Positions 1,251 through 56,644 are shown, numbered from the stretch's first letter. The stretch is 64,000 nucleotides of DNA from Geosiphon pyriformis uo1 (GCA_016748015.1 JAAOMT010000525.1:186001-250000); one strand, 5' to 3'. Translations and numbers: made by a program. The notes: a model not told the origin generated them from the sequence alone.

Positions 1251-1276
1251 TGTTTTTCTTAATATTAAAGCTACTA

Positions 1277-34828: not shown

Positions 34829-35500
34829 CTAAAATGGTAATAATGTAGAGAACTCATTTTTTAGATTGAATTCACCTAGCTGGCTACATAATTCGACTTT
34901 ACTGTTGCTACCTCCGTTATTGCTTCCTCGATTGTTCTTGTTTTTACCTAAATTATTGTTGCCATTGAGATTGCCGTTACCAGAGCCAACGTTATTGTTA
35001 CCATTTTTATTGGAACCAAGGTTATTGTTACCATTCGAATTGCCATTATTGGCGTCAAGGTTATTGTTACCTTTGTATTTCCATTATTGGATCCAAGATT
35101 GTTGTTGCCGTTTCCATTGCCATTGTTGGGGCCTACATTGTTGTTACCATTAGCATTGCCATTGTTGCTGCCGACATTTCCATTTCCATTGCAGTTTCCA
35201 CTTCTATCACGTTTAATATGCTTAATAGCTTTTTCCAGAATATTAATAACTCTCCAGCCGTTATATGGTCTTGTTACCATTGTTATTGCCGTTAAATCCG
35301 CCTCCTACATTGTTGTTTCCGTTATTTTTACCATTCTGGCTGCCAATATTTCCGTTACCGTTATTGTTTCCGTTTCCTCCGAAAGCACGTTTATCCAAAC
35401 CAGGCGACCAAGTCCTTGGATCACCACCAATCAAACCATGATCTGCGAGCACCAGTGTGTTGGCAAACAAAATGCCAAGGCAAATGCTAGTTTTTGACAT
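34829..35500 (-). pseudogene. Secreted Asn/Gly 13-mer repeat protein, paralogue A (frameshifted)
   Basis: Signal peptide MSKTSICLGILFANTLVLA, then LDKR and NG repeats. Relative to paralogue B there are frameshifts near 35270 and 35072, and NG repeats continue in other frames to TAG at ~34829. Could be an assembly error or a real pseudogene. Confidence 0.75.
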
Positions 35501-35800
35501 TTTTAATTCTTTGAGTGTAAAAGATTTAGAATGTTTAATTTTAGAGCTAGAAACTTTTAGTTTCTGAATTGATTGTAGAAGAAAGAGAAGCTTTTCTTCT
35601 TGATGAGATGGGCGAAAATTTAACGGGAAAGCTTTACTTTTATAAGAAATCGTTATGTTAGTTTATGATATGTTTTTTTAGAGAAGCAGTTTTGAAAACT
35701 GTGGCTTCCTTTCTTCAAAATTCATTTTCGTTAAATTTGACTTTTCATCACTTATTTGGGTAATTTTGTGAGAACTCATATAATAAGCCCACCTGTTTTT

Positions 35801-36640
35801 NNNNNNNNNNNNNNNNNNNNNNNNNNNNNNNNNNNNNNNNNNNNNNNNNNNNNNNNNNNNNNNNNNNNNNNNNNNNNNNNNNNNNNNNNNNNNNNNNNNN
35901 NNNNNNNNNNNNNNNNNNNNNNNNNNNNNNNNNNNNNNNNNNNNNNNNNNNNNNNNNNNNNNNNNNNNNNNNNNNNNNNNNNNNNNNNNNNNNNNNNNNN
36001 NNNNNNNNNNNNNNNNNNNNNNNNNNNNNNNNNNNNNNNNNNNNNNNNNNNNNNNNNNNNNNNNNNNNNNNNNNNNNNNNNNNNNNNNNNNNNNNNNNNN
36101 NNNNNNNNNNNNNNNNNNNNNNNNNNNNNNNNNNNNNNNNNNNNNNNNNNNNNNNNNNNNNNNNNNNNNNNNNNNNNNNNNNNNNNNNNNNNNNNNNNNN
36201 NNNNNNNNNNNNNNNNNNNNNNNNNNNNNNNNNNNNNNNNNNNNNNNNNNNNNNNNNNNNNNNNNNNNNNNNNNNNNNNNNNNNNNNNNNNNNNNNNNNN
36301 NNNNNNNNNNNNNNNNNNNNNNNNNNNNNNNNNNNNNNNNNNNNNNNNNNNNNNNNNNNNNNNNNNNNNNNNNNNNNNNNNNNNNNNNNNNNNNNNNNNN
36401 NNNNNNNNNNNNNNNNNNNNNNNNNNNNNNNNNNNNNNNNNNNNNNNNNNNNNNNNNNNNNNNNNNNNNNNNNNNNNNNNNNNNNNNNNNNNNNNNNNNN
36501 NNNNNNNNNNNNNNNNNNNNNNNNNNNNNNNNNNNNNNNNNNNNNNNNNNNNNNNNNNNNNNNNNNNNNNNNNNNNNNNNNNNNNNNNNNNNNNNNNNNN
36601 NNNNNNNNNNNNNNNNNNNNNNNNNNNNNNNNNNNNNNNN
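35801..36640. other. Assembly gap (840 N)
   Basis: Run of n characters. Confidence 1.
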
Positions 36641-37669
36641 GGAGCCAAGGTTATTGTTACCATTAGCATTGCCATTATTGGCGCCAAGGTTATTGTTACC
36701 ATTTTTATTTCCATTATTGGATCCAAGATTGTTGTTGCCGTTTCCATTGCCATTGTTGGCGCCTACATTGTTGTTACCATTAGCATTGCCATTGTTGCTA
36801 CCGACATTTCCATTTCCATTGCCGTTACCACTTCCATCACGTTTATACAAATCACGTTTATACCAGTAAGATGGTCTATTGTTGTTACCATTGCTATTGC
36901 CATTAGATGAGCCGCGATTGTTGTTACCATTGTTATTGCCGTTAAATCCTCCTCCTAGATTGTTGTTTCCGTTATTGTTTCCATTGTTGCCGCCAATGTT
37001 TCCGTTACCGTTATTGTTTCCGTTACCTCCACGTTTATACTCATCACGTTTATACAAATCACGTTTTTCCTCCTCATCACGTTTATACAAACCACGTTTA
37101 TATTTACCCCAACGTTTTTCCTCCTCATCACGTTTATACCAGTAAGATGGTCTATTGTTGTTACCATTGCTATTGCCATTATATGAGCCAAGATTGTTGT
37201 TACCATTGCTATTGCCGTTAAATCCTCCTCCTAGATTGTTGTTTCCGTTATTGTTTCCATTGTTGCCGCCAATGTTTCCGTTACCATTATTGTTTCCGTT
37301 ACCTCCACGTTTATACTCATCACGTTTATATTTACCCCAACGTTTTTCTTCCTCATCACGTTTATACAAACCACGTTTATATTTACCCCAACGTTTTTCC
37401 TCCTCATCACGTTTATACCAGTAAGATGGTCTATTGTTGTTACCATTGCTATTGCCATTATATGAGCCAAGATTGTTGTTACCATTGCTATTGCCGTTAA
37501 ATCCTCCTCCTAAATTGTTGTTTCCGTTATTGTTTCCATTCTGGCTGCCAATGTTTCCGTTACCGTTATTGTTTCCGTTACCTCCGCGTTTATCCCAACG
37601 AGGAAATGGCTCTCCGAGCACCAGGGTGCTGACAAATAAAATGCTAAGGCAAATGCCAGTTTTTGACAT
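36641..37669 (-). CDS. Secreted Kex2-type-processed repeat polyprotein (paralogue B), 3' end lost in the gap
   Basis: Signal peptide MSKTGICLSILFVSTLVLG; 17 KR sites in 343 sequenced codons; three 57-aa Asn/Gly modules ending RPSYWY-KR (DNA period 276-279 bp); short spacers DEEE, WGKY, GLY, DEY, DLY; a fourth longer NG module runs into the gap. Confidence 0.92.
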
Positions 37670-37718
37670 TTTTAATTCTTTGAGTGTAAAAGATTTAGAA
37701 AGAGAAGCTTTTCTTCTT

Positions 37719-37761
37719 GATGAGATGGGTAAAAATTTAACGGGAAAGCTTTACTTTTATA
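37719..37761 (-). promoter_or_regulatory. Core promoter: TATAAAAG plus downstream TCATC (Inr-like)
   Basis: TATAAAAG on the minus strand at 37754-37761 and TCATC at 37719-37723. The same arrangement precedes the other three paralogues. Confidence 0.65.
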
Positions 37762-40639
37762 AGAAATTGTTTTGCTAGTAAATTATATGTTTTTTTAGAG
37801 AAACAGTTTTGAAAACTGTGGCTTCCTTTCTTCAAAATTCATTTTCGTTAAATTTGACTTTTCATCACTTATTTGAGTAATTTTGTGAGAACTCATATAA
37901 TAAGCCCACCTGTTTTTCCTCTAATAATAATAATGGAACAAAATGATTGATTATCTAAAATTTGAGATCCAAGCCCAGTTACTTGGCAAAAATCAACATG
38001 ACTGATAATCAATTCTCTCACAATAGTTTAGCCTGAAATTTATTTCTTCTTGATAATTTAAACCTACAAAAATTAAAGGTGGGCAAAGTCCATGATAATT
38101 AAGTTCTAGTTACAAAAAAGGATTCAGCGGTTAATACTTTAAAGGGAACCAAGCCATTTGATGACTTATTTTATTGATGATGATGATGACGGTTAATGGG
38201 CAAATCTTTTGATAATCCGCAGATCTTTTGATCTGATAAAAAAATTATTTAATTATTTACAGGCTTTTTGGTTGGGGAAGTTTTAACCCGAGAACATTTG
38301 GTTATTGACCCTATTTATTCTTCCAAATATATCTAATTTTGAGAAATTCAATCTTTTTTACTGCAGTTTTGAAAGCTAATTTTTGAGATATCCAATCGTT
38401 TTACGGCAGTTTTGATATATCGGCTGTAAAGCTTGAAAATAGGTTTAAAAGAAATTTTTCAGCGCGGCGAAACGAATCAAAAACTCCATATTGAAACTCA
38501 TCAAAATTAAAATTTAAAGGTGGCTTTTTCAAAATAATTGGCTTAGGCTTTTGAATAAAATTTAAGATGTTTTGATCTCGATGGATTGGATATCTTTAAA
38601 TATGAAAAATTTATTTTATTCCTAAAAGAAATTTTCTTTCATTCCACCATCTTTGATTTGGGGGATTGAAAAAAGAAAAGAGAGAACAATTCTTGAAAGA
38701 TAAAATTATTTCTCTTCCTTTCATAATTCGATTAATCTTCTTGGACAAAACCAGTTGATTAAATTTTTCACTGTTATAAAATTATCTTTTCTTGCAAAAT
38801 TGGGTTCATTTTCTTTCGAACAAAATTAATTAAATTACTAAAAAATATTGAACCAAGAAATTTTTTAATGAATTTTATGATCAGTCTCGTTTGACAATAT
38901 ATTATGCAAATATTTTTTAAAGAAATGTGGTTAGAACATTCCTATTCACATCTTTTGTTTCCCATTAAGAAGTCAGGGAAATAGTGAATACTTGATTTAT
39001 CAATTTGAGATTGTGAAAACTATAATTTTTTTTTCATTTTTTTTAGATCTCACATGTTCTTTGACTCATTAAAACCTCTCGCCAAATGTCTATACATACA
39101 AAAGTTAAGTCAAAATTAAATGAGATAATAATTAGTAAAGATGAGACAATGTAAATTTTCTTCTTGTGACAAGAAGTAGCCATGTCGTTCATTCAATTAA
39201 ATATTTCATTTAGTAGAAAATTAGGATTACATAATAAAAAATAGTCTTTGAATTATGACTTAAAAATACAAAGATTAGAAAAAATAGATTTTGTTTCGAA
39301 AAAAAGTAACTCCCTAAATGATCAAAGAATCAACTGGAAATGAACTGTAACATATAATTATTGCCAAAAAACATAGGTTTTCCATACATTTTAAACATAA
39401 TTTAAATGAAAGCGTTTCTTAAGGAGAGATTTCAGGTAATATATTAAATTTTTACCATGACGTTTCTTTATTTGTGAATTTTCGTTGATAGATACGTGTT
39501 TCTTATCATAAATCATTTAGACAAACATCATTAATTATAAAAATTTGGCATATATTAAATATATTTTATGACATTGATGAAGAGGCAATATATCACACTA
39601 TTTCAGCTATTTAATAATCTGTGTATTACTTCGTTTCATTTTTTTTAATCTAATAAAATATTTCTTTGAAAAAATTTTGAATTATGTGTTTTATCCTTTT
39701 TGAACATTTTAAATATAATTAAATATAATTAAATATAAATAATAAAAGTAAGTGAGATAATATTACATTTATTTTCATGATAATAAATGACTTTATAATA
39801 TATTTTTTTTTCTATTAATATAACTGAACTATTACTTTGAAGTATCCATTTTTATTAGAAATTTAAAATTTTTAGAGTGTCTATATATAATTTTTTCAAG
39901 GGGAAAAAACAAGAAGATATTTGAAACATTTAAAATCACCGAAATGACCTTTTTTTATACTTTTTTATACGGGAAATGGTCTTGAAAATAACATCATCAA
40001 CAATTTAAAAAATTATAGATTATACACAAAAGAGAATCCCATTTCTTTAAAAACCAAAGTATTCTTGTTCCCAAACCTAGGATCAAAATATAAACAATAG
40101 TCTGAACGGTTTGCAAAATTTCTTTATGGTGATAGCATGTTAAACTTTTTTGTTTACGAATCTTTATTTTAAAAAACGATAAATTAAATCGAAATTGAAT
40201 TTTGCATTTTACATTTTTTTGAAATTAAAACCAGTATAAAAAAAATATAACTATCTTTATTTAGATATATAATTTGAAAAGCTTGATTTTTTTTCTTTGA
40301 ATATCCAAAAATAAATGTTTTTTATTTGAAAAGAGAAAAGGCTTAATTTATTAACATTCTTACCATTTTTAAATTCGGTCTTTTTACCTTTACCTTTATT
40401 CAAACAAATCATACCTTATTTAACAATATTTAGATTAAATTTTTAGGGTGATGTGGTAAGTATGATTAGAAATCAAACATATTTTTTTATTTTTTTTGTT
40501 TAAATAATAAAATATCTTTATACCTTAATTATATAATTATTAGAAAGTTAGGGTGCATTTATTTTCAATTATAAGTAATAGAATCTAAAAATTTCGCCTT
40601 CCTAACTGCAAATTAATTTAATTAAAAATGTTTTATATT

Positions 40640-42500
40640 TGGTAATTCAATTTTTGAAAACAATATGTTTATTACAAAATACAACTTTTATTACATATAT
40701 GCAACACATAATTTGCCATTTAAGCCAATTAATATTACTTTAAATCAAATAAAAAACAGATTTTGTGTTTTTATTTTGTTAATACAACTGTTTAAAACAC
40801 TGTTTTCTACTATAAAGTTGTTGATTAAATTCTTTATAGCTTTTTTACTAACTTTAACTTGTGTTTTTTAATGGTTTCAAAGAATTATTAGATTAAAAAA
40901 ACATTATTATTTACAGTAAAATTTCATTCTTTAACTATTTTATTATTATTACATAATAAAGCAGCACTAAATAATTTTAAATTTAAGAAAATTTCTAATC
41001 TGTCTTTTTTATAACTAAATTTAAAAATTCAGTTTTGCATTAATTTTTTATTAATCAATAATAACATAACCAAAACAAGCAAAAAATCTATAAATTTAAC
41101 TACAAATTTTACTAAACTAAACAAATTTTGAAGTTAATTTTCTAAAAAAACCAATTTAAAATTATTAAAAACATTAAAAACAGCAGAGCTATTTAATTTA
41201 AACAAGCTTTTATTTATAGTCAAAAAAAAACTTAATATTAATATAAGTGTTAAAAATATAATTTGTAATAAAACAAAAAAAAGAAAAAACAAGCTTTAAA
41301 ATAATAAAAATGTTTTAAAAAACCAAAAAACTGAATTTTTCGACATTTTAAAAGAGTTTGCTTTAAATATTATAAAAAAAAGTGGTTTTCTGGTTGTTTT
41401 GGTTTTATTATTTAAATAATAATCAGAAAAGTTATCTTAAAAAACAGTTGCTTGGCTACTAATTTTTACAAAAGTTTTGGGTTTTAATAATAATAATAAC
41501 AACATTAAAACTATTCTTAAATATAATAATTTTAGTTTTAATATTAAAACAATACAAAGTATTTACAAAAAAAACTAATTTAATTTGGTTATTTTAATGA
41601 TAATATTAACAAAAATATTTTATTTTAAAACCAAACTGTTTATTTACTTAACTGTTATATTTATATCAAACTTAATATTAAAAACTTAAAACTTTTACAA
41701 AACCATTATTTTAACAAATATTTTTTTATTAACAGAAAAGTTTTTCTTATTAGTATTTATACAATTAAAAAATAAATTATTTAAATTATAATTTATCTTA
41801 AAATTAATCATTTTTTCACAACTTACCAAAAATACCATATTGTTTATTTATTTTTAAACATTATTTTACTAACGTTAACAAATAAAACATTCGTCAATAT
41901 TATAACTAAAACAGCCAAAAAATTACTAAACTTAACAACAAATTATTTCAGCAAAGATAATTTTGCCAACTTAAATTCCAAAGAAGTTAACTTAAAATCA
42001 ATTAAAAAATTAATAACAATAATAGATTAAAAAATAAAAAGCAGCAATTTTAAAAAATAATTTTAAACCAAAAAATTAATTTTTAAAAATCTTAAAATTT
42101 ACTATAAATCTAAATATAAGTTTTAATAAGTAAAATAAAAACACTTTTTATTTAGAAACTTAATAATATATATTAATAACCAAAATTGTTTTATTAAATA
42201 TAGCTTTTTTAAGATATTGGTTTTAATATTATTATCATTTAAATTTTTAAAAAATTTTTTAAATAAAATTAAAACTAAAAAATAAAACATAAATAACTAT
42301 TTATATAAAAAAATAACTTATTGATTTTAAAAGCAGTATAACCAAAACAAATTAATTAACTTATTACTAAAAGTTTTATCAAAAAATATTTATAACATTA
42401 ATATTATTTACAAAAATCTTTAAAAACATTTTATATAAAAGATACAATATTAATTTAAATAAAATAAAAAACTTTGTAATCTTAAAAGTAGTAAAAAAAA
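40640..42500 (-). mobile_element. Heavily AT-decayed retroelement coding remnant (possibly LINE ORF1-like)
   Basis: CpG-poor decayed coding-like sequence with the same strand bias as the minus-strand LINE copies. Near 41955-41995 the minus strand reads LTSLEFKLAKLS. The assignment is weak. Confidence 0.35.
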
Positions 42501-43719
42501 GTAATTTAACAAACTTTTAATACAATTTTATATTAAATTAATATAAATTTTAAAACAAATAAATTCATATTAACAATTATTTAAAAATAATTAATTACTA
42601 ATATATTTTTATTAAAATTATGTGTAATTAATTTAATTGTGGTTTTATATTATATATATATATATTTTTTAAATAATAAAAACTTGATTATTATATAGTT
42701 TTTAATATTGTTATTTTAAATATATAATTATAATTTTAATAAACTTTTTTGTTAATTTTTTGCTATATAATACAATAAAACCAAAAAATAGATATTTTAT
42801 TATTAATCTAAATAAAAATTATATATATAATTTTATTTTTATTTAATAATATATTGTCTAAAATAATTCTATCAAATATTTTGCTAAAAAGCTTTTTAGT
42901 ATTGAAAAATAAAGAATAATAACTAAAAAAATACAAAAAATTGCTATAAAAAACTCTCAAGTAATAAAGCTAATAAGATAAAAGATGTATTTAAAATTAA
43001 TGCTAATAGAAAAAATTAAAAGCTTAATATAATATTGTCTTTAACTTTTTTCAACAAAGCATCAAAAATATAAAAAAGAATATAAAAATATTAAAAGCAA
43101 CTAAAAAAAAATATAATTCTAAAAAGAATTGTTAATGTAAAAACAAAAAAATTTTCATGTTAAAATATCAATTATTTAGTTATTAATACAACAGTTTTAA
43201 AAATAACAGAAATAAAGAAATTATTTAATAAAATAAATAGATTTGGAAAAACAACTACTTAATAAAAGTTAGAAATGTTATTAATTATTTGTTTAATAAT
43301 ACAATACTACATAATTTGCAAAATTTGTATAATTTGTAAAAATATAATTACATATATTAAAGATTAATATACACTTATTATTTTTAAGCATAAAAAAACT
43401 CGGAAAAACTATGGTTAAAAAAATTGGGGTTTTTCGTTTTTTACTTTTATAAACCAAATTACTTAATAGTTTAAAAATAAATGATGCTTTTTTTAGCAAT
43501 ACTATAAAAAAAAATTGTTATTTGAAAGTTAATAAAAAACCCAAAATATTCAAAAGTGAAAAAATAAATTCAATTTTACAAAGCTTTATGTCACAAAAGA
43601 GCTATTTATTATAAATCTGTATTATTTACTAAAAAAAACTTGAGTACAAATTGTTAAAGATAAAATGACCAAATTTAACATTAATAATAATAATAATAAT
43701 ACAGCAACTTAATAATTGC

Positions 43720-44230
43720 TGTTACAAAGTGTAGCCCAATCGTTAACTTAAATTAGCCACAACTCACGCGTTTTTTATATGTGACTAGTCACAAAATTAA
43801 TAAAGATAATTAATAACATAAAAGTAAGTAAAGCAAAGTATTGTTAAAATAACAACTCAAGTAAAAAATTAATAAATAAAATAAAAATTTTATACAATAA
43901 AAAATTGAAAAACACACATAACACATTAATTTAAAAAAAAATTATTTTAATTAAAGCTATGATACTAATGTATTATTGTTTAATAAGTTTACTAACAGTA
44001 AAAATAAGGAAAAGATAAATAACTAGATACAAGAAATTTAAAAAATTTAAAAAATTTAACAGCTTTAATAACTTGGATTAAAACCAAATTGAATATTAAA
44101 AAAAGCAGTTTATTAATAAAAGTTAAATTATAATTAATCAAATATAAAAATAGCTACTTATAACATAAAAAAAATAAATAAGTCAACAAAACAAACAAAT
44201 TTAATAAAATAATACAGAAAAAAATATAGT
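43720..44230 (+). repeat. Dispersed repeat, possibly an LTR remnant
   Basis: Begins TGTTAC. 43805-43960 aligns with 12825-12920, and 44025-44150 aligns with 17330-17460. Confidence 0.5.
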
Positions 44231-45616: not shown

Positions 45617-48600
45617 ATATATATATAAATATATATTTAGCAATTAAAAAATTAAATTAAATTAAACAAATTGCTAAAGATAATCAAAAATTTATTAAAT
45701 AATAAAACTATAAAACTTTAAATAAGATATAAGATAACAGCATTCAGATTATATGCTTTGTTAAATACATGTTTGTTTTTGAATAACATGCTATTGACTT
45801 AAAAAAAACATAGGTGTTGATAATTTTAAAGTTATATAAATTAACACAAAATTAATAACTTTAATTAAAACAGCCATAAAACATTTATTTAAAATCTTGT
45901 TAAATTACATATTAATTGTTTGTAACAAAAAAAGAGTACTTAAAAGAAATAACTTTTTGTGCTGAAAGATACATTAATAAAAACACCAATTTACATAATA
46001 TGTTTATTAATAAAAAATATTTTAAAAAAACAAAAGTTGTAATTAATTTTTTAGAATATACAAAAAGCATTTAACTTTATAAAATAAACATATTTAATTT
46101 TTTTTTACTATATACAATAATAAAATAATAATTTTTTTTGATTTGATTAATAAATACAAAGTATTTAATAATCTGAATTATAGTAGTATTTTTATTTTTA
46201 TTATATTATATATCTTTTTTTATGTAAAATTAAGCATAAGTTAAAATTTTTTAAATACACATAAAACATAAATAAAAGTATTAATCTTATATAATAATAA
46301 GTATATATTTATAATATTTATAATATAATCAAATATTTGCAATAAAAAATATATTAAGCAAAAAGTAAATTAAACATAATTAAAACAAAAAAAATTAATT
46401 AAAATAGTATAATTAAAGTATAATACCAAAACTTTCATATAAAATTTAAAAAAATAATAAAAAAACAGTTAAATTTTATATATATGTTTATAAAAAAATT
46501 TTAATTATAAAATATAAAAAATTTATATAATATTTATTATTTAAATACTAAATTTTTAAAGTATAAGAAAATTAAAAACTCTGATTATATAAAATTGTTA
46601 AAAGTTATAAGTCTTATTATTTATTAAATATTAATTAAATACTAATATTTATTATAATTTATATTTCTTAATAAATTCTATTTTAATAAAAAAATATAAA
46701 AAATTCTTGAATATTTAATTAATTTTAACTAAAAACTTTATTTTTAAAAGTTATTAAATAAAATTATTAACAACCAAAAATCGATTAAATCTGAAATAGC
46801 AAAATTAAACTATTTTAATATTTTTTATTTATATTTTGAATGTTAAACTTATTTATTATTGTTAATTATTATATTAATTAATTTATTGTAAATAAATTAA
46901 TCAAAAATTTGAAATTTAGATTTTTAATTTTTATTAATAATTTAAATTTGGCAAATAATTAGTAAAAAATTTAGTATTTGTTTTGTTTTGTTGTTGTTTA
47001 AAAATAATATATATTATTTTGAAGCATATTAATAAAAATTTTATTTTAATTATTCTATTTATTTAAAACAAAAATCAATACAATAATATTAACTATATAT
47101 TTTTTTTCTATTTTTTCTTGATTGTATAATTGTTAGTTTTTGTAAAGTATATTAAATAAATATTTAATATTAAATTTTAAGAGTATTAACATAAGACATA
47201 GAATTATACTAGTATGTTATTTTTTGTTATTAGTACAAACTATTTATTTATCTTCAAATTTTTTTGTTACTTTTTAAAAAAAATAACAACTAAGATATTT
47301 ATGAAACTGATTTTACAAATTAAATTCTTACTTATTCAATTTACTTATTAAAGTTAAATTACTCTTTAATTATTTTTGTTATTTATTAAAATATTATATT
47401 TGATTATTAATATTGCAAAAATATTTTAAAAAAGCTTTTTTAATTTTTGCAAATGTGTTTAATTTGAAATCTAAATTTAGTTATTATATTATAGAAATAT
47501 TATTAATTTTTGATTGTATAATTAAAAAATGTAATTTAAAGTTTTTATCATAGTAAAAATACATAAAATCTTTGTTATCATCTTTTAATTATGTATTTTT
47601 TACTATTCAAAATATTTTAAAAAATGGGTTTAAATAAACTTATTGACTTACTATTAAAAATGAATATTCAATTTCACCAATTATTTATTAAATAGGAATA
47701 AAAATAATGATTTAAAAATATTCGTATGTTAAAATTATATTAATTTTAATTGATGCTTTAACAATATTTTTAATATAAATAACTTATTAATTTTTTTTAA
47801 AAAAATAAATTGTTATTTATATATTTTTAAATATTTTTAATAATAAATTTAATAAAATTAAGTATTTATAACTTATTAATGTTAAAATAAGAAAAATAGA
47901 TTGTTAATAAAACTATGCGCAATTTCAAGATAAAAAGATATCTATATCTTCTAAATATGAAACTTTTTATTTTTACATTATTTTATGTTTCAAAGCAAAA
48001 TTTAATTATAATTTATTTATAAAAATACTATTAATTCTTTAAATGGTTGATATTTACAGCTTATTTCTCCAGACTTTTTTATTATTTGAGATTCATTTTT
48101 TTTGCCTTATCTTTTGTAATTACCCAATACATGTTTGTAGCTAATTATTTAGACTTGTAACCATATATTAAATATTACTCATTCACATTTTTAGTTTGAA
48201 CTTGTAAAATTTCTTATTTAGCAAGCATTAATTGGTTTTGGGTTTATTTTGCCAAGTTTCTTGTTTAAGATTGAATTCATGTTATTTAATTTTTTAAGAA
48301 AATTAGTTTTGAACAAGTTTTGTTATTTGTAACTCTTGAGTAAATTTTAACCTTTTTATATTTGAATAATAATAAGTAATATTTTTCAAATTTTAATAAG
48401 TTTAGCTAAACGAAAGTTTCTCGGTAAATTTAGTAAAATTGCTACAATTTTACTGAAAATATCAAAACTTTTTACAGTCTATCATATTTAAATGCAATGA
48501 ATGTGCAAAACCAAATAAATATCTATGATTTTGTCAAATATACATAAAAGTAACATGCATTTAATAAAGTTTTTAAAGTTTTTTTTATATAAATGCTTTA

Positions 48601-50017
48601 ACTAAGTGTAATCAAGCTGCTATCTACGCACATACAACAAGGAATATTATATAGTACAAGTTCACGCGGTTACAACGTGTGACCAGTCATAATTTCTTAA
48701 ATAAAATTAATAATATTTACAGTCCAATGTATTAGTTAAGAAAGAAGTAATATTTTATTCCGAATTAAATTGAGAAATATCAATAGAAATAAAAGATTGA
48801 AAAACTAATTTAACCTATGCATTTAAATTCTATTTAAATAAAAGCTTTTTAAATTCAAAATTCATTAATTTAGTTCCAAATTAATTTATGTCGAATAAAA
48901 AATATTTTTTTTCCAATTTTATTAATTTCGTTGAACAAATTAGAACATTTATTTGCTATTTAAACTTCTTGAATTTTTGTTGTTTAAAAGTTAACTTTTG
49001 AAAATTTTATATATAACGTGAAATTCAATACCTAATTTATTAACAATAGATGACTAAGTTAACCATTTTTTGATTAGTGTTTGTTCAATAAAATTAACTT
49101 TAACAATTATATATAAATATTGAACAAAGAACAAAATGTGTACCATTATAATCCTTAAAATTCTGGCCAAACGAAAAATGACAAAATTTACCAAAAAAGA
49201 TAAGGTCTTAAGTACGATAACCCAAAAACAATGTTTAATTTTAACTTATTGATTTATTTGCTATTTGTTTATTTTATCTTTGTTTTTTTTTAAGAATTGT
49301 ATTAAACGTAATAACTTATTTTAATTAAAAAATCTTTAAGTTTATTTACCTAAATTAAAATTTATATTGGTTTTAAGTTAGAATCATTTGAATAATAAAA
49401 GCCTAAAGCAGATTATCTGAATTACAATTAAAATTTTGTGATCAATCAAATCTATTCTCATTCAAAATCTTTATTTACAAATGTAACTAGTTTCTATTTT
49501 CTATAGCTGTTATAAACAAAGCCATTAATTTTGGTTAAAACAGATAATATAACAATTATTGCAGCATTTATGTAACATCTTTTTCTGTTTTGCGATTCTT
49601 GTTTCTCATTTTACAATGACAATCACTGATGACATATAACATAGGGAGTCTAGACTGGTGATACACAATTTTTGTTATCGCTAGGAAAGGGTTATTTCCG
49701 CAAGTTCGTAACACACATATATATTTTTGAATCTTTGTTTCCAAATAAAAATGTGCCCTTCATTATCGTGGATCTAAAAGTCAAGGATAAATCAATTTAA
49801 GGATAGCCGAAAAAAAAAATGGTAACTTTTTGGAAACTTCTTTAGATATTATTCTGAGTGGCACCGACTTCGATTTGAAAACTAAAATCTTGTACTCAGA
49901 TGGTTGCCAATTCAATATATAAGGGCGGTGCGTCTTTAACAGGCAAAAACGCCTTACTCAATATAATAAAAATTGTGTATAGTAATACATTTATTCCAAT
50001 CGTGAAGTGAAATAAAA

Positions 50018-51308
50018 ATGACCATAAAGGGTTTTATAGCTATTACAGCGTCTCTAATTCCTTTAATTATCTTAATTTTAATCTTTCCCAAACCCAAGAA
50101 TGATTCTTTTCCGGAACCAGACCCTTCGACAAGCACTGGATTTCCAACCTGGCATTCGAAAGTGAAAGGTACGCTCGCATATAATGGAAATTTAGATATT
50201 TTATTTGAAATAATCATGGAAAATTTTTTTAAAGAAATTTACCTAATATTCATTCAAAATCTCAGATTACGACCCTGAAAGGAAATATGCCAGCTATGCA
50301 TTCGCAATAATAATTGAATTATTTGGTGGTATCCTGGCTTTTAAATGGGCATTTAACAAGAACCAATCTCGACGAGTGAATTCCTACTTTTACAACGGCG
50401 TCACAGGGACGACAACAACTTCACTCTTCAATCAAGTTCTCGCTATCTACATATTGTTCACCGGATTGACCGCAATTTTTGCTTTGTTATTCGATATCGG
50501 GAAATTGTGGGAGAGTTCGGGCGTCTGGCATAACCTTTGGGAAGCGGCAATCTTGCTACTGCTTAAGGAAGGAGGCCGAATCAACAGGATTACAAAATAT
50601 ATTCTCACTCTTGGAATCTATCTATTTACCGTGCACAACATAACTCTTTTTATAGATTGGCCTCTAGATGCAGTCTTCTTCAAATTTCAAGGTAAGAACA
50701 CTAATAACTTTTTGAATTAAATCACTAAAAGAATCTCTCATTCACCTATTACGTCATCATATACAGGTCTCATATTCGATTTTGGCCAAGCGATTGTCTA
50801 CCCCATTATTTACTTTAACACAAGGAAACATGTGAGAGAAGAAGCAGAGACTCAACTTCCCTTCGAAAACGATGATGGTTTGCAAGAAGACCAGGAATAC
50901 GAACCAAAGCTCTATTCAGTTGATCATCCTAAACAACTTCTTTTATTAGTGGCTGCTTCATGGATTCATGTGCTTGGTAATTTAAGCGGTGCTGTTCTTG
51001 CTAATAATGGGACTGCGTAAGTGAAAAGAATTTTCTTTTGAATTTTATTTTCATTATGATATCTCATAGCTCAAAATATAACATTTTCCAATAGTGATCT
51101 CTTATTCCACGGGAGCTATGCCGTTACTTTTGCAATATATCCATTATATATTTTCTTGGATACGCATGGTGTTAGTGTTCTTCCGCAAAAAAGAATTTAT
51201 CTTTCAGAACCTGCAGCCTGGAAAACTGCCGTCATAATTATTTGGTCCACTTTCCTATCACTATTAACTATTAGATCTTTGGTCGTTGCTCCGGAACAAG
51301 GGGCCTAA
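50018..51308 (+). CDS. Multi-pass membrane protein of unknown function, 346 aa, 4 exons
   Basis: Exons 50018-50168, 50266-50691, 50767-51016 and 51095-51308 joined by GT-AG introns give an uninterrupted 1041-nt frame with about 8-9 hydrophobic segments. TATA-like tatataag at ~49916. Confidence 0.88.
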
Positions 51309-53594
51309 TAAAGAGGATTTCAATATTAGGCTTATAACCCAATAGTGAATTCCATTAAGTCTTGTCGTTCATTTTTGTATAAATATCCTTTTCAGTTAAA
51401 ATACAGACGGATGAATATGTTTGTTTTTACAAATTTATTTATTTTGTATTATCTAATAATTTAATACGCTTGTACAAAAAAAAACTTTTATTAAAAAATG
51501 GGACATATAAATAGTAAAAATATTCATACATAATGTGGTGCACAAAATTTGTATTTCTTTATTTTGACTATTTGTTATTTTTATTCATTAAATAATTATT
51601 CAAATAAAGTGAGAATTTAAATATATAGTCTTTAATAGTGAGTAAATAAGTTTACTTAAGAGCATTTTAAAAGAAACTTGATATTTTTTCTTAGAATCTT
51701 ACATTAAAAGTTTAAAAAAGTATGAAAAAAAAGCTATAAATAAATTTTATTAAGTTGATTTATAAAATAGGTTTAAGTAAAGCTTAATTATTATAAAAAA
51801 TGTACCATTAAATTTTTATTAAATTTCAATAATTTTAATTGAATATTAAGAAAATCTAATTTAAGAATTTCAAATTGTGACTTAGTTTTAAAAATATTTA
51901 TAGTATAAGAAAAGAATTTTAATTTTTAAAAAATTGCTTTTTAAGTAAATTTATTTATTGTTTGAATTTAATGATTACAAATTATTTTAGAATTTACCGT
52001 TTTTTTACATTCAAGATTGAAATTACTTTTTTTTAAATAAATAACTTGTGATATTCAATTAGTTTTTTATTTTTATTTTTTTTATTTTAATTCCTAATAA
52101 TAATAATAATAATAAAATCTATTGAATAAAATTACAAGAAATATGTCTTAAAATTTAATTTTAATATTGGTTCAAAAAATTATTATTATTATTAAAAAGA
52201 AATATTCTTTTATGCAACCATTTTTTGATAAAATACTTTTGTGTACTTATAATAGTATGTAAAAATTCATGCAAGACTTTAAAGTAAATAAGTTTTTTAA
52301 CTCATTTTACAAAAAAATATTCTGCTGGAATGGTAATTATTATAAACCGAGACCTTTCATTATAACGGGGAATGAAATTTCAAATATTCATCTTTACTTG
52401 TGAAATAAAATATTGATACGAAAAAATAAAAAATAAACAGTTGGTTACTTTTTTTTCTCTGATTTGTATATTTTTTGAATAAGAAGCAATCAGAAACATA
52501 TTTTAAATAATATTTTAGTAGCCTACCACAATTAATAACCAAAGAATTAAATATTAGGGCATTTGAACAAAATATTTTGTTGTTTAAAATTAATGACAAT
52601 TGCTTAAAATTTCACTAACCGTTACTTCTATAATTTAAAAAAAAATTGGTAAAGAAAATTTTAACAATCAAAAGTTTTTTTAAAAAATAAAATTTTCTGA
52701 AATATACATCTACTCAATGCAATGCAATGCAATGTTATTTTTTTTTTTAAATTTTCAAGTATCTTGTCACATTTATTATTTCACAATCCCAAATAGTAAA
52801 ATTGATTTTAAAAATGACAACTCTTTATATTTTAATCAATTGCAAATTGAAGAACATGAGAATAAAGAAAATTTTCCAACTTTTTCGAATAATCATAATT
52901 TTATTTTACTGAATAAATTTTAAGAATAAAATATTAGAGTTAATACTTTAATTGCAACAAAATATTTTGAAACTAAGTTGAATTCTTGTGAAATACATTT
53001 AAATTTTTAAGCAAAAATTTTTAAGGAAAATTTTTTTTGATTGTAAAAAATTCCAAAAATTTTATGTTAAAAAGATTTTAGTTTATTTGAATTAAAAGAG
53101 TCACACAAGCCATATTATGTAAAAAAAAAAAATTTTTTTTCTTAAGAAACCCGAGTCTTGCATTTTAATTCTAAATGTCAATTTATCGAAAAATCCTGTT
53201 TATTTAAAAATAAGTATCAGAATTTTAATGATAAAAAATTTTTAATCATATAAATCGCCTTTCATTCCGTTCTATTTCTTTTAGCTTTTATTAAAGTCTC
53301 AACATTTATTAGAGAAAGAAATTTTTTTTTCCCCAAATTGAAATATAGAAATCACAAATACAAACCAATCATATTTATTTTACAATAATAAGATTGAAAT
53401 CTATTAATCTGCTTTTTCCTAGAAGTTGATTGTTATCTGATTTCAAATACTACTTAAAAAATTGATGAATTAAATAATCCTATAGATACAGTTATTGCTT
53501 ACAATTTATATTTATATAAATAAAATAGATAAAGTAATAAATAAAAATTTTAGGCCAGGCTATACTACTGAAATTTTTGAGATAACAGGGAATT

Positions 53595-54170
53595 TTAGTG
53601 GACATATTTCTTTCCACTTTTCTTTCCACTTTTCTTTCCTTTATTACTGCCGTGATTAAAGTTTCCATTATTGTTACCATTATAGTATCCAACATTTTTG
53701 TTCCCGTTATTACTTCCATTATCATTCCCGACGTTAAAAAGTCCGTTGTTATTACCATTATACGATCCTGTATTTTTGTTTCCATTGTAATTACCATTAC
53801 TACTACCCTTATTTAAATCACCATTATTATTGCCGTTGAATGAACCTGCATTCTCATTTCCATTATAATTGCCATTGTTATTACCATAATTTAAATCACC
53901 ATTGTTATTTCCGTTATAATCTCCCTCATTACTATTCCCATTTTGATTTCCATTATTACTGCCAACATTTCCATCACCATTGTTATTTCCATTATAGTTG
54001 CCAGAATTGTTATTCCCATTTCCATTTCCATTGTTGTTGCCAACATTTCCATTACCGTTACCGTTACCATTACCGCTGCTTCCGTCACGTTTTTCGATGA
54101 ATACGATCGGCTGAGCCAGAACTAATGAGGAAGTGAGGAGTAAAAAGATGAGGCAGATAATTTTTTCCAT
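53595..54170 (-). CDS. Secreted Asn/Gly 13-mer repeat protein, paralogue C (191 aa)
   Basis: Signal peptide MEKIICLIFLLLTSSLVLA, propeptide ending EKR, 11 NGxxNGxxNxGxx repeats and a basic tail KGKKSGKKSGKKYVH. TATAAAAG at 54269-54276. Confidence 0.92.
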   Translation of the reverse strand: MEKIICLIFLLLTSSLVLAQPIVFIEKRDGSSGNGNGNGNGNVGNNNGNGNGNNNSGNYNGNNNGDGNVGSNNGNQNGNSNEGDYNGNNNGDLNYGNNNGNYNGNENAGSFNGNNNGDLNKGSSNGNYNGNKNTGSYNGNNNGLFNVGNDNGSNNGNKNVGYYNGNNNGNFNHGSNKGKKSGKKSGKKYVH

Positions 54171-55429
54171 TCTGATAATTTTAATTTTGAAATTGATAAA
54201 GTTTGTTACTTGTATTTAATAAATATTTTTTTTATTTATGGATGAAAAAGTATTTGCAACTTTGACTTCTTTTATACTTGAACATGTCTTAAATCGCAAT
54301 TAAGCTCTTTTAGACTAATTAATCATCTGATGTAAAATTTTTAACAATATCTTTGTTCTTCTCATGCTAATTTTTTTTTTCTTCTTATAGAAATAGAATT
54401 AATATTCCTTGAATGCTTTAGGAAAAAGGGATAGAAATATTAATTTAACGGTATTGATAAAGCTTTAAATAAACTAGATTTGAAAACAAGATGAACAAGT
54501 TCACCCAATACGATTCACAAAATTGTTTGATGAGAATGTTTTTCATCCAATTAAAAGGTCAAAAATAGATCCGAAATGAACGAACGAATGAATGAATGAA
54601 TCAATCAATAATTCAATCAATCAATAAATAAATAAATATTTGGTTCTTTTAGTTTTCAATTTAGGGAACTTTTCAAGAAAATCATCATGTCATAAATTAT
54701 CCAAATCTTACCTAAATAATATAAAAACAATGATGTTGAATGAAATTTCTTATTTATTATTAATGAATTTTATTAAAATCATCATTTTACCTCAAAATAG
54801 CCCAAAAACTTGGTTAAAGACAAGTTTATAAAAATCTTTTACCACACTCTGAAGCATCAAAAAAGTTTTTTGGGATAAACTCTTTGAAAAAGCGTTTTTT
54901 TCATCTAATCTATTAATTATTTAAAAATCCAGTTTTTTGACAAATCGAATATAGTATAATTTTAAAATTTTCCTATTTAAGAAACATTAAAGAAAAATTT
55001 TAATTAATTTTAACTAAATTTGAATAATATTACCAAATATTATAATTCTTTTTAAAATAAGATTTCTGGGAAATTTTTTTTTTGGAGTTTCTCAATATGG
55101 TAAAGAATTTTTTTAAAAAATGTTAAGAGAGTCAATAATCAAATAAACATTTACAACAGATAATTGAATAATTAATTATGATATATATAACTAAATAAAA
55201 ACTTTTTCATTAAAATACTTCTTTTTCTTTACTCTTTCTTTTTAAATCATTATGAAAATTTTTTTTAAAGATTACAAATCTTTTTAAACAATTACCTCGA
55301 TATGGATCCTTAAAACTCTATATTCATCATCAGATCAGCATTTTAATTGAATTACGTGTATACATCATTCGTACTACTTGGGTCGATCAAAAAAAAATTC
55401 CTGAGGAAAATGGTTTGGAAATAGAATTT

Positions 55430-55452
55430 TGTGTGTGTGTGTGTGTGTGTGT
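55430..55452. repeat. (GT)n microsatellite
   Basis: Direct read. Confidence 0.95.
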
Positions 55453-55972
55453 ATATATTGAGTAGCTTCTTTTTATCAAGATTATTTGTTCATTTTTAAA
55501 CAAAGAAATTGGAAATATTTTCTTTAACAGATTACATATTTATTTATTATTATCTGTTCCCAATAATATGTGAAAGAAGAAAAGAAGAGAAGTAACATAA
55601 ATTGAGAATTTGATAGATTCTATTAGAAAAAAAGAGCAAACTATCTCTATACTTTTCATTCTCAAATATAAATCTTCTATAGTATAATAATAATCATCTA
55701 TTAATACCTTTTAAAATATTTAAATGTCATGAAAAATTAAAAATCATGAGTGAGAAACGTTTTGCTTGTAAAAATGATTTAAAAAAAAAGGGCTTTCATT
55801 AGAGTTGTGAAAAATTTAAAAGATATTCATGATAAAAGTACACAGATCAAATGTTAAGTGGGTGGGTGAGTGGGTGAGTGAGTGAGTGAGTGGGTGAAGA
55901 TGTATACTAATCTCTGAGGAAAAAATTTACATCGTCTATTCTACTACTATTATAATTACCCATTCTTTATAA

Positions 55973-56644
55973 TCAATAATTACCATTACCATTACCACTA
56001 CCATTATTATCTCCTTTATTAGCATTTCCATTATAGCCTCCATTGTCACTACCTACGTTCTTGATTCCATTAGTATTACCATTATAACTTCCCTTATTAC
56101 CGTTTCCATTTACAATTCCATTACGATCTCCGACATTATATATACCATTGATGTTGCCGTTATAACTTCCTTGATTGTAGTTTCCATTTAGAACTCCATT
56201 ATAATTTCCCTTATTATATATGCCATTGTCGTTGCCGTTATAACTTCCGACATTGTAGTTTCCATTTAGAATTCCATTATAATTTCCCTTATTATATATG
56301 CCATTGTTGTTGCCGTTAAAATCTCCCTTATTGACGTTTCCGTTTCCAACTCCATTATAATTTCCCCAATTAGCAATGCCATTGTTGTTGCCGTTATAAT
56401 CTCCCTTATTGGCGTTTCCATTAACGTTACCATTACCATTGCCATAATTTTCCACGCCATTACTGTTGCCATTGTGACTTCCTGTGTTTTCGTTTCCGTT
56501 TACGTTTCCATTACCACTGCCAACATTGCCATTGCCATTGCCATTTCCGTTATCATTGCTTCCTGAGGTGCTTCCTGAGGTTGGGTATCCGAAAACGAAG
56601 GAGGAACTGAGAAACAAGGTGATGAGAGTGATAAATTTCAACAT
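55973..56644 (-). CDS. Secreted Asn/Gly 13-mer repeat protein, paralogue D (223 aa)
   Basis: Signal peptide MLKFITLITLFLSSSFVFG, 14 full plus one partial NGxxNGxxNxGxx repeats, no KR site. TATAAAAG at 56798-56805. Confidence 0.92.
   Translation of the reverse strand: MLKFITLITLFLSSSFVFGYPTSGSTSGSNDNGNGNGNGNVGSGNGNVNGNENTGSHNGNSNGVENYGNGNGNVNGNANKGDYNGNNNGIANWGNYNGVGNGNVNKGDFNGNNNGIYNKGNYNGILNGNYNVGSYNGNDNGIYNKGNYNGVLNGNYNQGSYNGNINGIYNVGDRNGIVNGNGNKGSYNGNTNGIKNVGSDNGGYNGNANKGDNNGSGNGNGNY

What the first reader, a model, noticed from the sequence alone, without database searches (positions are those of the whole stretch)
34829..56644. Cluster of four secreted proteins built from a strict 13-residue NGxxNGxxNxGxx repeat: candidate beta-solenoid/functional amyloid surface system
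Seen: four co-oriented genes within 22 kb, each with a signal peptide followed by 13-aa repeats. In C and D, N1, G2, N5, G6, N9 and G11 are invariant (e.g. NGNNNGIYNKGNY, NGILNGNYNVGSY) while the other positions vary, and the DNA is diverged between B, C and D, so this looks selected rather than slippage. Established: short periodic Asn/Gly repeats form beta-solenoids or cross-beta fibres with Asn ladders (curli CsgA, ryegrass ice-binding protein; proposed for mycobacterial PPE-MPTR repeats). Inference: a 4+4+5 three-sided coil, with uncapped solenoids from different paralogues stacking into extracellular fibres (wall coat, adhesion, symbiont interface or ice/water binding). I do not recognise a named family.
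Basis: partly seen in the sequence, partly recalled or inferred. Interest (0 to 1): 0.9.

Follow-up and report, generated by a model that had tools for sequence, protein, structure and literature searches.

The report
Secreted 13-residue Asn/Gly repeat proteins
This stretch of the Geosiphon pyriformis genome holds several members of a large, mostly unannotated family of secreted proteins built almost entirely of a strictly conserved 13-residue Asn/Gly repeat; the family is already in the literature as "GN-rich disordered proteins", but here it is predicted, at moderate confidence, to form an unusually narrow beta-solenoid.

Summary
The repeat is real and under selection. C (53595-54170) and D (55973-56644) are intact minus-strand genes: a signal peptide, then 11 and 14 in-register units of NGxxNGxxNxGxx. 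B is only a 5' fragment, cut by the assembly gap, and is a Kex2-type polyprotein. A is a broken tandem copy of B with at least two frameshifts. The ORF read through the gap is an artefact. The cluster continues past the window with two more B-like genes, and the genome has about 40 such loci.

The organism is Geosiphon pyriformis. The family is not unnamed. Schultz et al. 2022 (PMC8786786) describe "GN-rich IDPs" in Paraglomus, Ambispora and Geosiphon (GpRIC1-3, with KR sites), but not the 13-residue period.

There is no Pfam, NCBIfam or PDB sequence match. The same repeat occurs in an ascomycete hydrophobin-like fusion and in scattered bacterial secreted proteins.

Two AlphaFold2 runs give a beta-solenoid with 13 residues per coil (pLDDT about 65). 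ESMFold2 folds C and D at pLDDT 85-88. AF2 is known to over-predict solenoids for repeats. Support for C-D association is weak.

The scan's first readers noted this family on other pieces of this genome (s1-491500, s1-491478, s1-491559).

Verdict: new members of a known but barely characterised family; the structural reading is plausible and untested.

The parts
55973..56644 (-). Gene D. Intact 223-aa ORF: signal peptide (about residues 1-19), then 14 in-register 13-residue units from residue 32 to the C-terminus. No KR site, no Cys.
   Evidence: Exact contigs of public run X1 lie on 56113-56588 only. AF2 models.
53595..54170 (-). Gene C. Intact 191-aa ORF: signal peptide, short pro-region ending EKR (a Kex2-type site), 11 in-register units, and a Lys-rich tail KGKKSGKKSGKKYVH.
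36641..37669 (-). Gene B, 5' part only (343 codons). Signal peptide, pro-region ending DKR, three 93-aa units each holding a ~57-aa Asn/Gly module plus KR-flanked short peptides, then plain 13-residue units running into the gap.
   Evidence: 5' part near-identical to the intact 496-aa paralogue at L021:2721-4211; alignment poor beyond B's extra module.
35801..36640 (.). Assembly gap. It hides the 3' end of B and the B-A spacer. The sequence is not continuous or in frame across it in any meaningful sense.
   Evidence: the flank at 35501-35800 is homologous to B's upstream region, not to B's coding sequence.
35501..35800 (-). 5' flank of A. A near-identical duplicate of the region upstream of B's start codon, showing that A and B are tandem duplicates including the promoter region.
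   Evidence: alignment A2.
34829..35500 (-). Gene A, a broken B-like copy. The first frame gives 79 aa (35261-35500) with a signal peptide, DKR and 2-3 units, then a stop. The repeats continue in two other frames to 34829, and the KR cassette is degenerate.

Best explanation
These are paralogues of the secreted Gly/Asn-rich repeat family of Geosiphon pyriformis (the GpRIC / 'GN-rich IDP' family of early-diverging Glomeromycotina).

Each gene encodes a pre(pro)protein. A signal peptide takes it into the ER. Where a KR site is present (A, B, C), a kexin-type protease probably removes a short propeptide, or in B-type genes cuts the chain into ~57-aa modules plus a long repeat tail. The mature product is an almost pure array of N-G-N-x-N-G-N-x-N-x-G-S-x units.

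The most likely physical state is a very narrow, disulfide-free parallel beta-solenoid with one 13-residue, three-sided coil per unit. The invariant Asn would stack in ladders and the invariant Gly would allow the tight corners. The variable positions 4, 8, 10 and 13 would give each paralogue its own surface.

Such rods, which have no evident capping domains, would serve as extracellular surface, wall or matrix proteins that may associate end-to-end or side-by-side.

Shown: the gene structures, the strict period, purifying selection, family size, taxonomic spread and the presence of a kexin gene. Predicted only: the fold. Inferred: cleavage, self-association and the extracellular matrix role.
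For: Period and invariance:
- 292 units from 16 paralogues were analysed. Spacings are almost all 13 or multiples of 13. Positions 3 and 7 are mostly N, position 12 is S/D/N, and position 10 is I/V/K/T.
- The invariant columns are visible in alignments A1 and A3.
- Synonymous sites are saturated, with zero non-synonymous change at the six invariant positions. The closer pair L006/L018 gives dN/dS 0.24.
- Non-Glomeromycotina hits keep the same period: 156 of 172 spacings are multiples of 13.

Fold prediction:
- The first AF2 model of D has pLDDT 64.9 (74-79 in the centre) and pTM 0.52. Strands repeat every 13 residues.
- Its neighbours are all beta-solenoids: MpAFP 3p4g (Z 14.0, rmsd 3.1, 194 residues aligned), Ag43 (Z 13.9), UspA1 head (Z 14.3), curli CsgA 8c50 (Z 11.7), LpIBP 3ult (Z 8.8).
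- The second AF2 model (41 sequences) has pLDDT 65.5 and the DSSP pattern E--EE--EE---- per unit.
- Its neighbours are again solenoids, including TmAFP 1ezg, where all 82 residues align at rmsd 2.5 over 87 model residues.
- ESMFold2, a different predictor run without an alignment, gave chain pLDDT 85-88 for mature C and D.

Extracellular and self-assembly context:
- Every intact paralogue has a signal peptide.
- Microdochium bolleyi KXJ90418.1 joins the repeats to a hydrophobin-like Cys-rich C-terminus (Pfam Hydrophobin_2 E 0.005, below the cut-off).
- The bacterial members have signal peptides.
- The genome has a kexin P-domain gene.

Expression:
- GpRIC cDNAs and transcriptome hits are reported in PMC8786786.
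- Run X1 holds exact contigs over D's coding region only.
Against: AF2 confidence is only moderate, and three of the five models in the first run scored 45-52.

The Z-scores (8-14) are in the range that repeats can reach by general arrangement alone (notes). Foldseek found nothing significant.

I could not inspect coordinates, so which residues face inward, and the handedness, are unknown. The fold that ESMFold2 produced was not shown.

The composition (35-40% Asn, 26-27% Gly, 12-19% hydrophobic, no Cys) is what the published work classed as intrinsically disordered.

A strict period can also exist in disordered proteins (for example the Pol II CTD; my own knowledge).

C has Asp where D has Ile at position 7 of alternate units, which is awkward if that position is buried.

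There is no experimental evidence for fold, fibres or localisation.
Confidence: 0.5

Rival explanations
1. The proteins are intrinsically disordered, hydrophilic Gly/Asn-rich wall or matrix proteins, as published ('GN-rich IDPs'). They would act as extended, hydrated or gel-like surface polymers. Any amyloid tendency would follow from composition only, and the 13-residue period would be kept for spacing or interaction motifs rather than for a fold.
For: Schultz et al. 2022 classify the Paraglomus, Ambispora and Geosiphon relatives as IDPs. The composition is polar and Gly-rich, with no Cys and few hydrophobic residues. AF2 pLDDT is only about 65, and AF2 has a known solenoid bias.
Against: There are essentially no indels across hundreds of units in fungi and bacteria. 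Six positions are absolutely conserved while synonymous sites are saturated. Beta-branched residues are enriched at position 10. ESMFold2 gave pLDDT 85-88 without an alignment.
Confidence: 0.3
2. The genes are mainly precursors of diffusible peptides or effectors, in the manner of Kex2-processed repeat proteins. The Asn/Gly modules released by kexin would be the active agents (signalling, antimicrobial, or acting on the cyanobacterial partner), not a structural material.
For: B and its neighbours have three (B) or two ~57-aa modules and short peptides, all flanked by KR. A and C have KR just before the repeats. [quoted passage not shown] KEPs are abundant in Glomeromycotina (PMC6339444). A kexin gene is present.
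Against: D and many paralogues have no internal KR and would be released as single arrays of 6-60 units. Even B-type proteins keep an uncut tail of about 25 units. Processing has not been shown.
Confidence: 0.12
3. The proteins are ice-binding or antifreeze beta-solenoids that protect a soil-surface fungus from frost.
For: The predicted narrow solenoid superposes on TmAFP (rmsd 2.5 over 82 residues), spruce budworm AFP, LpIBP and MpAFP.
Against: No regular Thr/Ser/Val ice-binding face is evident; the outward candidate positions are highly variable. Fold similarity among solenoids says nothing about function. The bacterial members come from varied, not obviously cold, sources.
Confidence: 0.05
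4. The loci are not functional genes, only replication-slippage low-complexity DNA that happens to be open.
For: The genome is AT-rich and repeat-rich. A is decayed. None of the eight intact ORFs looked up (C and D among them) is in the protein collection as an exact sequence.
Against: The units are diverged at the DNA level while amino-acid invariance is perfect. Signal peptides are conserved. Relatives are expressed as cDNAs. Exact contigs over D's coding region exist in a public run. Homologues exist in other phyla.
Confidence: 0.02

Closest known systems
GN-rich IDPs of early-diverging Glomeromycotina: Pabra_AGL1/2/4, Amlep_AGLs and Geosiphon GpRIC1-3 (MH580277-9). Sources: Schultz, Wu & Baumann 2022, PMC8786786; Hoffrichter 2018 thesis as cited there
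   Same: Same organism and relatives. ER signal peptide, 33-39% Asn and high Gly, and KR sites. The published Pabra_AGL1/2 sequences visibly carry the same NGxxNGxxNxGxx register. The GpRIC ORFs of 456-470 aa resemble the 496-aa B-type gene.
   Different: The paper found no tandem repeat at strict settings and reports only 4-5-residue imperfect repeats. It treats the proteins as disordered and lists three Geosiphon members. Here the period is exactly 13, there are about 40 loci, a solenoid is predicted, and bacterial and ascomycete relatives exist. I could not align C, D or B to MH580277-9 directly.
Kex2-processed repeat proteins (KEPs; Le Marquer et al. 2019, PMC6339444)
   Same: B-type genes have a signal peptide and near-identical units separated by KR dibasic sites.
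   Different: The released units are long (~57 aa) Asn/Gly modules, plus a ~300-aa uncut repeat tail. C has a single KR (propeptide type) and D has none.
Beetle antifreeze beta-helices (Tenebrio molitor AFP, PDB 1ezg; 12-residue coils)
   Same: This is the narrowest known solenoid class. The whole 82-residue chain superposes on the AF2 model at rmsd 2.5. The core has few hydrophobic residues.
   Different: TmAFP is held by a disulfide in every coil and shows a TCT ice-binding face (my own knowledge). The proteins here have no Cys, no sequence similarity and no regular Thr face.
Curli CsgA and other functional-amyloid beta-solenoids (PDB 8c50)
   Same: Secreted, Asn/Gly/Ser-rich imperfect repeats predicted to stack as a cross-beta solenoid. 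Structural match Z 11.7 and Z 6.0.
   Different: Curli repeats are about 19-23 residues with two strands per coil and depend on a dedicated CsgB/E/F/G machinery (my own knowledge). There is no Curlin_rep Pfam hit.
Lolium perenne ice-binding protein (PDB 3ult) and Marinomonas MpAFP (PDB 3p4g)
   Same: Asn- and Gly-rich short-period beta-solenoids. Z 8.8 and Z 14.0.
   Different: Their periods are 14-15 and 19 residues, and MpAFP needs Ca2+. There is no sequence relationship and no evident ice-binding face.
Mycobacterial PPE-MPTR repeats (NxGxGNxG)
   Same: Asn/Gly-rich short tandem repeats in exported proteins.
   Different: The motif and period differ (my own knowledge of the motif). There is no PPE domain and no Pfam hit.

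Membership tests
GN-rich IDP / GpRIC family of Glomeromycotina (PMC8786786) | N-terminal ER signal peptide | tested here: met
   Hydrophobic leaders in A, B, C, D and in all 15 intact paralogues examined. Judged by eye and from the AF2 helix at residues 2-15. No SignalP run.
GN-rich IDP / GpRIC family of Glomeromycotina (PMC8786786) | High Gly and Asn (published: Asn 33-39% in P. brasilianum), low Pro | tested here: met
   Mature D: Asn 34.8%, Gly 27.0%. Mature C: Asn 39.9%, Gly 25.8%. Pro 0-1 residues.
GN-rich IDP / GpRIC family of Glomeromycotina (PMC8786786) | Occurs in Geosiphon / Archaeosporales / Paraglomerales | tested here: met
   The contig belongs to Geosiphon pyriformis: KAG9292817.1 lies on a 319,635-nt contig, the length of C580. 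An Ambispora leptoticha homologue, CAG8643519.1, was found.
GN-rich IDP / GpRIC family of Glomeromycotina (PMC8786786) | Sequence similarity to Pabra_AGL1/2 or GpRIC1-3 | tested here: inconclusive
   The same 13-residue register is visible in the supplement's Pabra_AGL1/2 sequences. No formal alignment to MH580277-9 was possible with these tools.
GN-rich IDP / GpRIC family of Glomeromycotina (PMC8786786) | Intrinsic disorder | tested here: inconclusive
   AF2 gives an ordered solenoid at pLDDT about 65. ESMFold2 gives pLDDT 85-88. No disorder predictor or experiment was used.
Kex2-processed repeat proteins (KEPs) | Signal peptide plus repeated near-identical units, each bounded by KR/RR | tested here: met
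   Met for B (three 93-aa units, 95% nucleotide matches, KR-bounded) and for the neighbours in L021. Not met for D (no KR) or C (one KR only).
Kex2-processed repeat proteins (KEPs) | Actual cleavage by kexin | not testable with these tools
   Only the presence of a kexin P-domain gene in the genome was shown.
Beta-solenoid proteins (fold class) | Parallel beta coils stacked with one repeat per turn | tested here: inconclusive
   Predicted by two AF2 runs, and all structural neighbours are solenoids. Confidence is moderate and AF2 has a known bias.
Curli-type functional amyloid | Curlin repeat sequence family | tested here: not met
   No Pfam hit at E <= 1. No PDB sequence hit.
Curli-type functional amyloid | Fibril formation | not testable with these tools
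   The C+D co-fold gave weak support only: score 0.50, best control 0.00.
Ice-binding beta-solenoids (TmAFP, LpIBP, MpAFP) | Flat, regular ice-binding face (e.g. TxT ladders) | tested here: not met
   Positions 4, 8, 10 and 13 are highly variable (entropy 3.2 bits each), with no Thr ladder.
Ice-binding beta-solenoids (TmAFP, LpIBP, MpAFP) | Thermal hysteresis or recrystallisation inhibition | not testable with these tools
   Needs an experiment.

The most novel reading that the evidence does not exclude
The NGNxNGNxNxGSx unit is a previously unrecognised, portable extracellular fold module: a disulfide-free Asn-ladder beta-solenoid with 13 residues per turn, narrower than any solved disulfide-free solenoid I know of. 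It is shared by early-diverging Glomeromycotina (expanded to about 40 loci in Geosiphon), an ascomycete hydrophobin-like fusion and scattered bacteria. It may have spread by horizontal transfer, and it may self-assemble into fibres at the fungal surface or the symbiotic interface.
Probability: 0.3. Interest if true: 0.75.

Novelty: new member of a known kind. Interest (0 to 1): 0.45.

Why it matters
If the prediction holds, this would be a new class of minimal beta-solenoid with no Pfam or PDB representative. That would interest work on protein design, functional amyloids and ice- or surface-binding scaffolds.

For mycorrhizal biology, it would turn a family written off as "disordered" into a structured family of about 40 loci in the only fungus with an intracellular cyanobacterial symbiont. 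Testable paralogue-specific surfaces could then be studied.

The work also shows that the public Geosiphon annotation misses or mis-models these genes. None of the eight intact ORFs looked up is in the protein collection, and one model fuses an F-box-like gene to a B-type gene.

If the proteins are simply disordered wall polymers, the finding is an ordinary extension of a published family.

Tried and rejected
Searches that gave nothing:
- Pfam and NCBIfam gave no family for the fungal or the bacterial members.
- A PDB sequence search with the family profile gave 0 hits at E <= 10.
- Foldseek against the PDB gave nothing at E <= 0.001.

Searches of limited use:
- The search for homologous proteins with D returned only 12 bacterial or metagenomic hits, because only the 8000 candidates sharing most words were scored. 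The full HMM search was more useful.
- The ESM Atlas by features gave only unnamed bacterial clusters at 0.83-0.85, which is lead level. By shape the best was TM 0.69 to an unnamed cluster.

Expression. Only one coded public run (X1, kind uncertain, 'probably DNA') held part of the stretch. Its exact contigs cover D's coding region 56113-56588, but not the flanks or C. This is suggestive of transcription, not proof.

Paralogue stacking (complex prediction, mature D + mature C, ESMFold2). The verdict was 'weak support'.
- Score 0.50, best of 3 controls 0.00.
- The mark was reached by 51 of 78 solved complexes and 2 of 108 mismatched pairs.
- At 0.60 or under it was reached by only 5 of those 78 solved complexes and by all 4 mismatches that passed (of 180).
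- The runs agree in at least 94% of contacts, and the partner's pLDDT is at least 85.
- I do not count this as evidence for fibres.

Readings rejected:
- One continuous B gene across the gap.
- A as an intact gene.
- Slippage-only low-complexity DNA.
- PPE-MPTR or curli family membership.

The Ca2+-binding beta-roll idea (prompted by the MpAFP match and by Asp at position 7 in C) was considered and left open. Acidic residues are too few for RTX-like sites.

Full report
WHAT IS IN THE SEQUENCE

The window is G000:C580:186001-250000 of a 128.3-Mb, 792-contig, very AT-rich assembly. The organism is Geosiphon pyriformis. A profile hit, KAG9292817.1 'hypothetical protein G9A89_006378 [Geosiphon pyriformis]', lies on a contig of 319,635 nt, which is the length of C580. 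Its N-terminus is the window's ORF 62479-63138.

A six-frame scan for NG..NG..N.G finds 44 matches. All are on the minus strand and all fall in four loci. Twenty shuffles gave none. TRF reports 39-nt and 78-nt periods at all four loci.

THE FOUR GENES

- D (55973-56644) is an intact 223-aa ORF. It has a signal peptide and 14 units, every spacing exactly 13 residues, running to the C-terminus.
- C (53595-54170) is an intact 191-aa ORF. It has a signal peptide, a short pro-region ending EKR, 11 units and a Lys-rich tail.
- B starts at 37669. It has a signal peptide and a pro-region ending DKR. Three 93-aa units follow (279 nt, 95% matches), each made of a ~57-aa Asn/Gly module plus short KR-flanked peptides. 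Plain 13-mers then run into the gap at 36640.
- A (35500 down to 34829) begins like B. It stops after 79 codons because of an 8-nt deletion relative to B. It can be followed only through two frame changes, and its KR cassette is degenerate. I read A as a decaying copy. Assembly indel errors cannot be excluded.

THE GAP

The bases just below the gap (35501-35800, minus strand) align almost identically to the region upstream of B's start codon. They are therefore A's 5' flank. A and B are tandem duplicates that include the promoter region.

The gap hides B's 3' end and the spacer. The 663-aa ORF '35678-37669' is an artefact of translating N.

An intact B-type paralogue 2.7 kb beyond the window's end (L021:2721-4211, 496 aa, plus strand) shows what a complete gene looks like: two modules followed by about 25 plain units. 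A second copy beside it is again interrupted by a gap.

THE FAMILY

A search of the whole genome with D gave at least 59 matches. By my count these fall in about 40 separate loci on 23 contigs, with open frames up to 1412 aa.

Fifteen intact paralogues taken from the fetched loci all have a hydrophobic leader. Many have a pro-region ending KR or RR. They carry 6 to 60 units.

Across the 292 units that match the motif (which fixes N1, G2, N5, G6, N9 and G11):
- Position 3 is N in 177 and position 7 is N in 265.
- Position 12 is S, D or N.
- Position 10 is mostly I, V, K or T.
- Positions 4, 8, 10 and 13 are highly variable.
- Spacings are 13, or multiples of 13, almost without exception.
- The six motif positions are also invariant columns of alignment A1.

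The consensus is N-G-N-x-N-G-N-x-N-x-G-S-x.

SELECTION

- Codon use at the invariant positions is mixed (AAT/AAC; GGA/GGT/GGC/GGG).
- Units within C and within D average 64% nucleotide identity.
- Between C, D and other paralogues, synonymous differences at the invariant codons are saturated (pS 0.75-1.0), with no non-synonymous change at all.
- The closer pair L006/L018 gives dN/dS 0.24.

This is strong purifying selection on the motif, not recent slippage.

D also shows a 26-residue super-period. Ile sits at position 7 in one unit and Ile or Val at position 3 in the next. I could not interpret this without coordinates.

WHAT IS KNOWN

There is no Pfam or NCBIfam family and no PDB sequence relative. 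The literature, however, does hold this family.

Schultz, Wu and Baumann 2022 (PMC8786786) describe 'GN-rich IDPs' in Paraglomus brasilianum, Ambispora leptoticha and Geosiphon pyriformis. [quoted passage not shown] They have ORFs of 456-470 aa and all carry KR sites. [quoted passage not shown]

Its supplement prints Pabra_AGL1 and Pabra_AGL2, which visibly carry the same 13-residue register. Even so, the authors report no tandem repeat at strict settings and only 4-5-residue imperfect repeats. The strict period was therefore not recognised.

B-type genes also fit the Kex2-processed repeat protein class of Le Marquer et al. 2019 (PMC6339444). The genome has a kexin P-domain gene.

C, D and six other intact ORFs are not in the 15-billion-protein collection as exact sequences. 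KAG9292817.1 fuses an F-box-like ORF to a B-type gene. The deposited annotation therefore misses or mis-models these genes, as Schultz et al. warned for such genes.

SPREAD BEYOND GLOMEROMYCOTINA

A profile of 12 paralogues, searched against 1.84 billion representative proteins, gave only 243 hits at E <= 0.001 and 49 at E <= 1e-10. Of the 151 proteins held, 63 have three or more strict units.

Named hits include:
- other Geosiphon proteins;
- Ambispora leptoticha CAG8643519.1;
- Microdochium bolleyi KXJ90418.1, an ascomycete protein with the repeats followed by a hydrophobin-like Cys-rich C-terminus;
- unnamed bacterial proteins from Mesorhizobium, Rhodopila, Streptomyces, a Flavobacteriales MAG and many metagenomes, usually with a signal peptide.

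One bacterial hit has a C-terminal hydrophobic, Arg-rich tail that looks like a sorting signal. This is by eye only; Pfam found nothing.

In the non-Glomeromycotina hits, 156 of 172 spacings are multiples of 13. Whether the shared repeat reflects common descent, horizontal transfer or convergence was not tested.

STRUCTURE

First AF2 run (D, 12-sequence alignment):
- Mean pLDDT 64.9 (74-79 for residues 100-170) and pTM 0.52.
- Strand segments repeat every 13 residues.
- An exhaustive structural comparison returned only beta-solenoids: UspA1 head (Z 14.3), MpAFP 3p4g (Z 14.0, rmsd 3.1, 194 aligned), Ag43 (Z 13.9), TibA, curli CsgA 8c50 (Z 11.7) and LpIBP 3ult (Z 8.8).
- The ratio of aligned model residues to target range fits one 13-residue coil per target coil. 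This is my inference.

Second AF2 run (41-sequence alignment including the bacterial and other fungal members):
- pLDDT 65.5.
- Its neighbours are again solenoids: LpxD and GlmU left-handed helices, Ag43 and spruce budworm AFP. TmAFP 1ezg aligns over all 82 of its residues at rmsd 2.5.

ESMFold2, used by the complex tool without alignments, gave chain pLDDT 85-88 for mature C and D. The fold it produced was not shown.

Caveats:
- AF2 is documented to produce confident but unrealistic solenoids for repeat sequences (PMC11795689).
- The Z values are within the range that repeats reach by general arrangement.
- Foldseek found nothing significant.
- I could not inspect coordinates.

I therefore put the solenoid at about even odds.

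ASSOCIATION AND EXPRESSION

The co-fold of C and D gave 'weak support': score 0.50 against a best control of 0.00. Passes at 0.60 or under were reached by only 5 of 78 solved complexes and by all 4 of the mismatches that passed. I do not build on it.

One public run held exact contigs over D's coding region (56113-56588) and none over the flanks or over C. Its kind is uncertain. Together with the published GpRIC cDNAs, this shows that the family is expressed. Expression of C is untested.

VERDICT

There are two intact genes, one gap-truncated Kex2 polyprotein and one broken copy, inside a larger cluster and a family of about 40 loci.

The family is already published, so these are new members of a known but barely characterised kind. 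New here are:
- the exact 13-residue architecture and its conservation under saturated synonymous change;
- the family's size;
- the mis-annotation in the public genome;
- the relatives outside Glomeromycotina;
- a consistent, though only moderately confident, prediction of a very narrow beta-solenoid.

First readers of this scan flagged the same family on other pieces of this genome (s1-491500, s1-491478, s1-491559) and flagged B's polyprotein nature on this window (s1-491346, s1-491818).

Noticed in passing
window 18441-24888 (+): A LINE-like retroelement. It has ORFs with reverse transcriptase (PF00078, E 1.3e-7) and RNase H (PF00075, E 6e-11), split over several frames. GC is 33-41% against 11-30% around it.
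   Followed up: partly
window 62479-63138 (+) and L021 (C580:250001-258000): The deposited protein KAG9292817.1 (697 aa) joins this F-box-like ORF (PF12937, E 9.6e-5, just below the cut-off) to a B-type Asn/Gly polyprotein lying beyond the window. This is probably a gene-model fusion across an assembly gap.
   Followed up: partly
L021:2721-4211 (+) and L021:~875-2501 (+): Two more B-type genes lie just past the window's end, in the opposite orientation to A and B. One is intact (496 aa, two KR-bounded modules plus about 25 plain units). The other is interrupted by another run of N. Module number differs between copies (3 in B, 2 here).
   Followed up: partly
P0017 (Microdochium bolleyi KXJ90418.1): An ascomycete protein with a signal peptide, about 7-9 of the same 13-residue units and a Cys-rich C-terminus. 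UniRef names it hydrophobin (Pfam Hydrophobin_2 E 0.005, below the cut-off). This is a natural fusion of the repeat to a surface self-assembly domain.
   Followed up: partly
P0019 (metagenomic, bacterial): Signal peptide, about 10 units, a 170-aa non-repeat domain with no Pfam hit, and a C-terminal hydrophobic stretch followed by RLRRRG, which resembles a cell-surface sorting signal.
   Followed up: no
window 53595-53640 (-): C ends in a Lys-rich tail (KGKKSGKKSGKKYVH), encoded by a perfect 12-nt tandem repeat (TRF 53607-53639). Several paralogues end in His or an aromatic plus His (…GNH, …EYH, …KHH, …WH).
   Followed up: no
window 56044-56551 (-): In D, Ile at repeat position 7 alternates unit by unit with Ile/Val at position 3, giving the 26-residue (78-nt) super-period. 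C has Asp at position 7 in the same alternation.
   Followed up: partly
G000:C608:604583-604753 (-), L024: A single kexin-type P-domain match (PF01483, 53 bits) within a 468-aa open frame. This is the likely Kex2 protease of this fungus.
   Followed up: no
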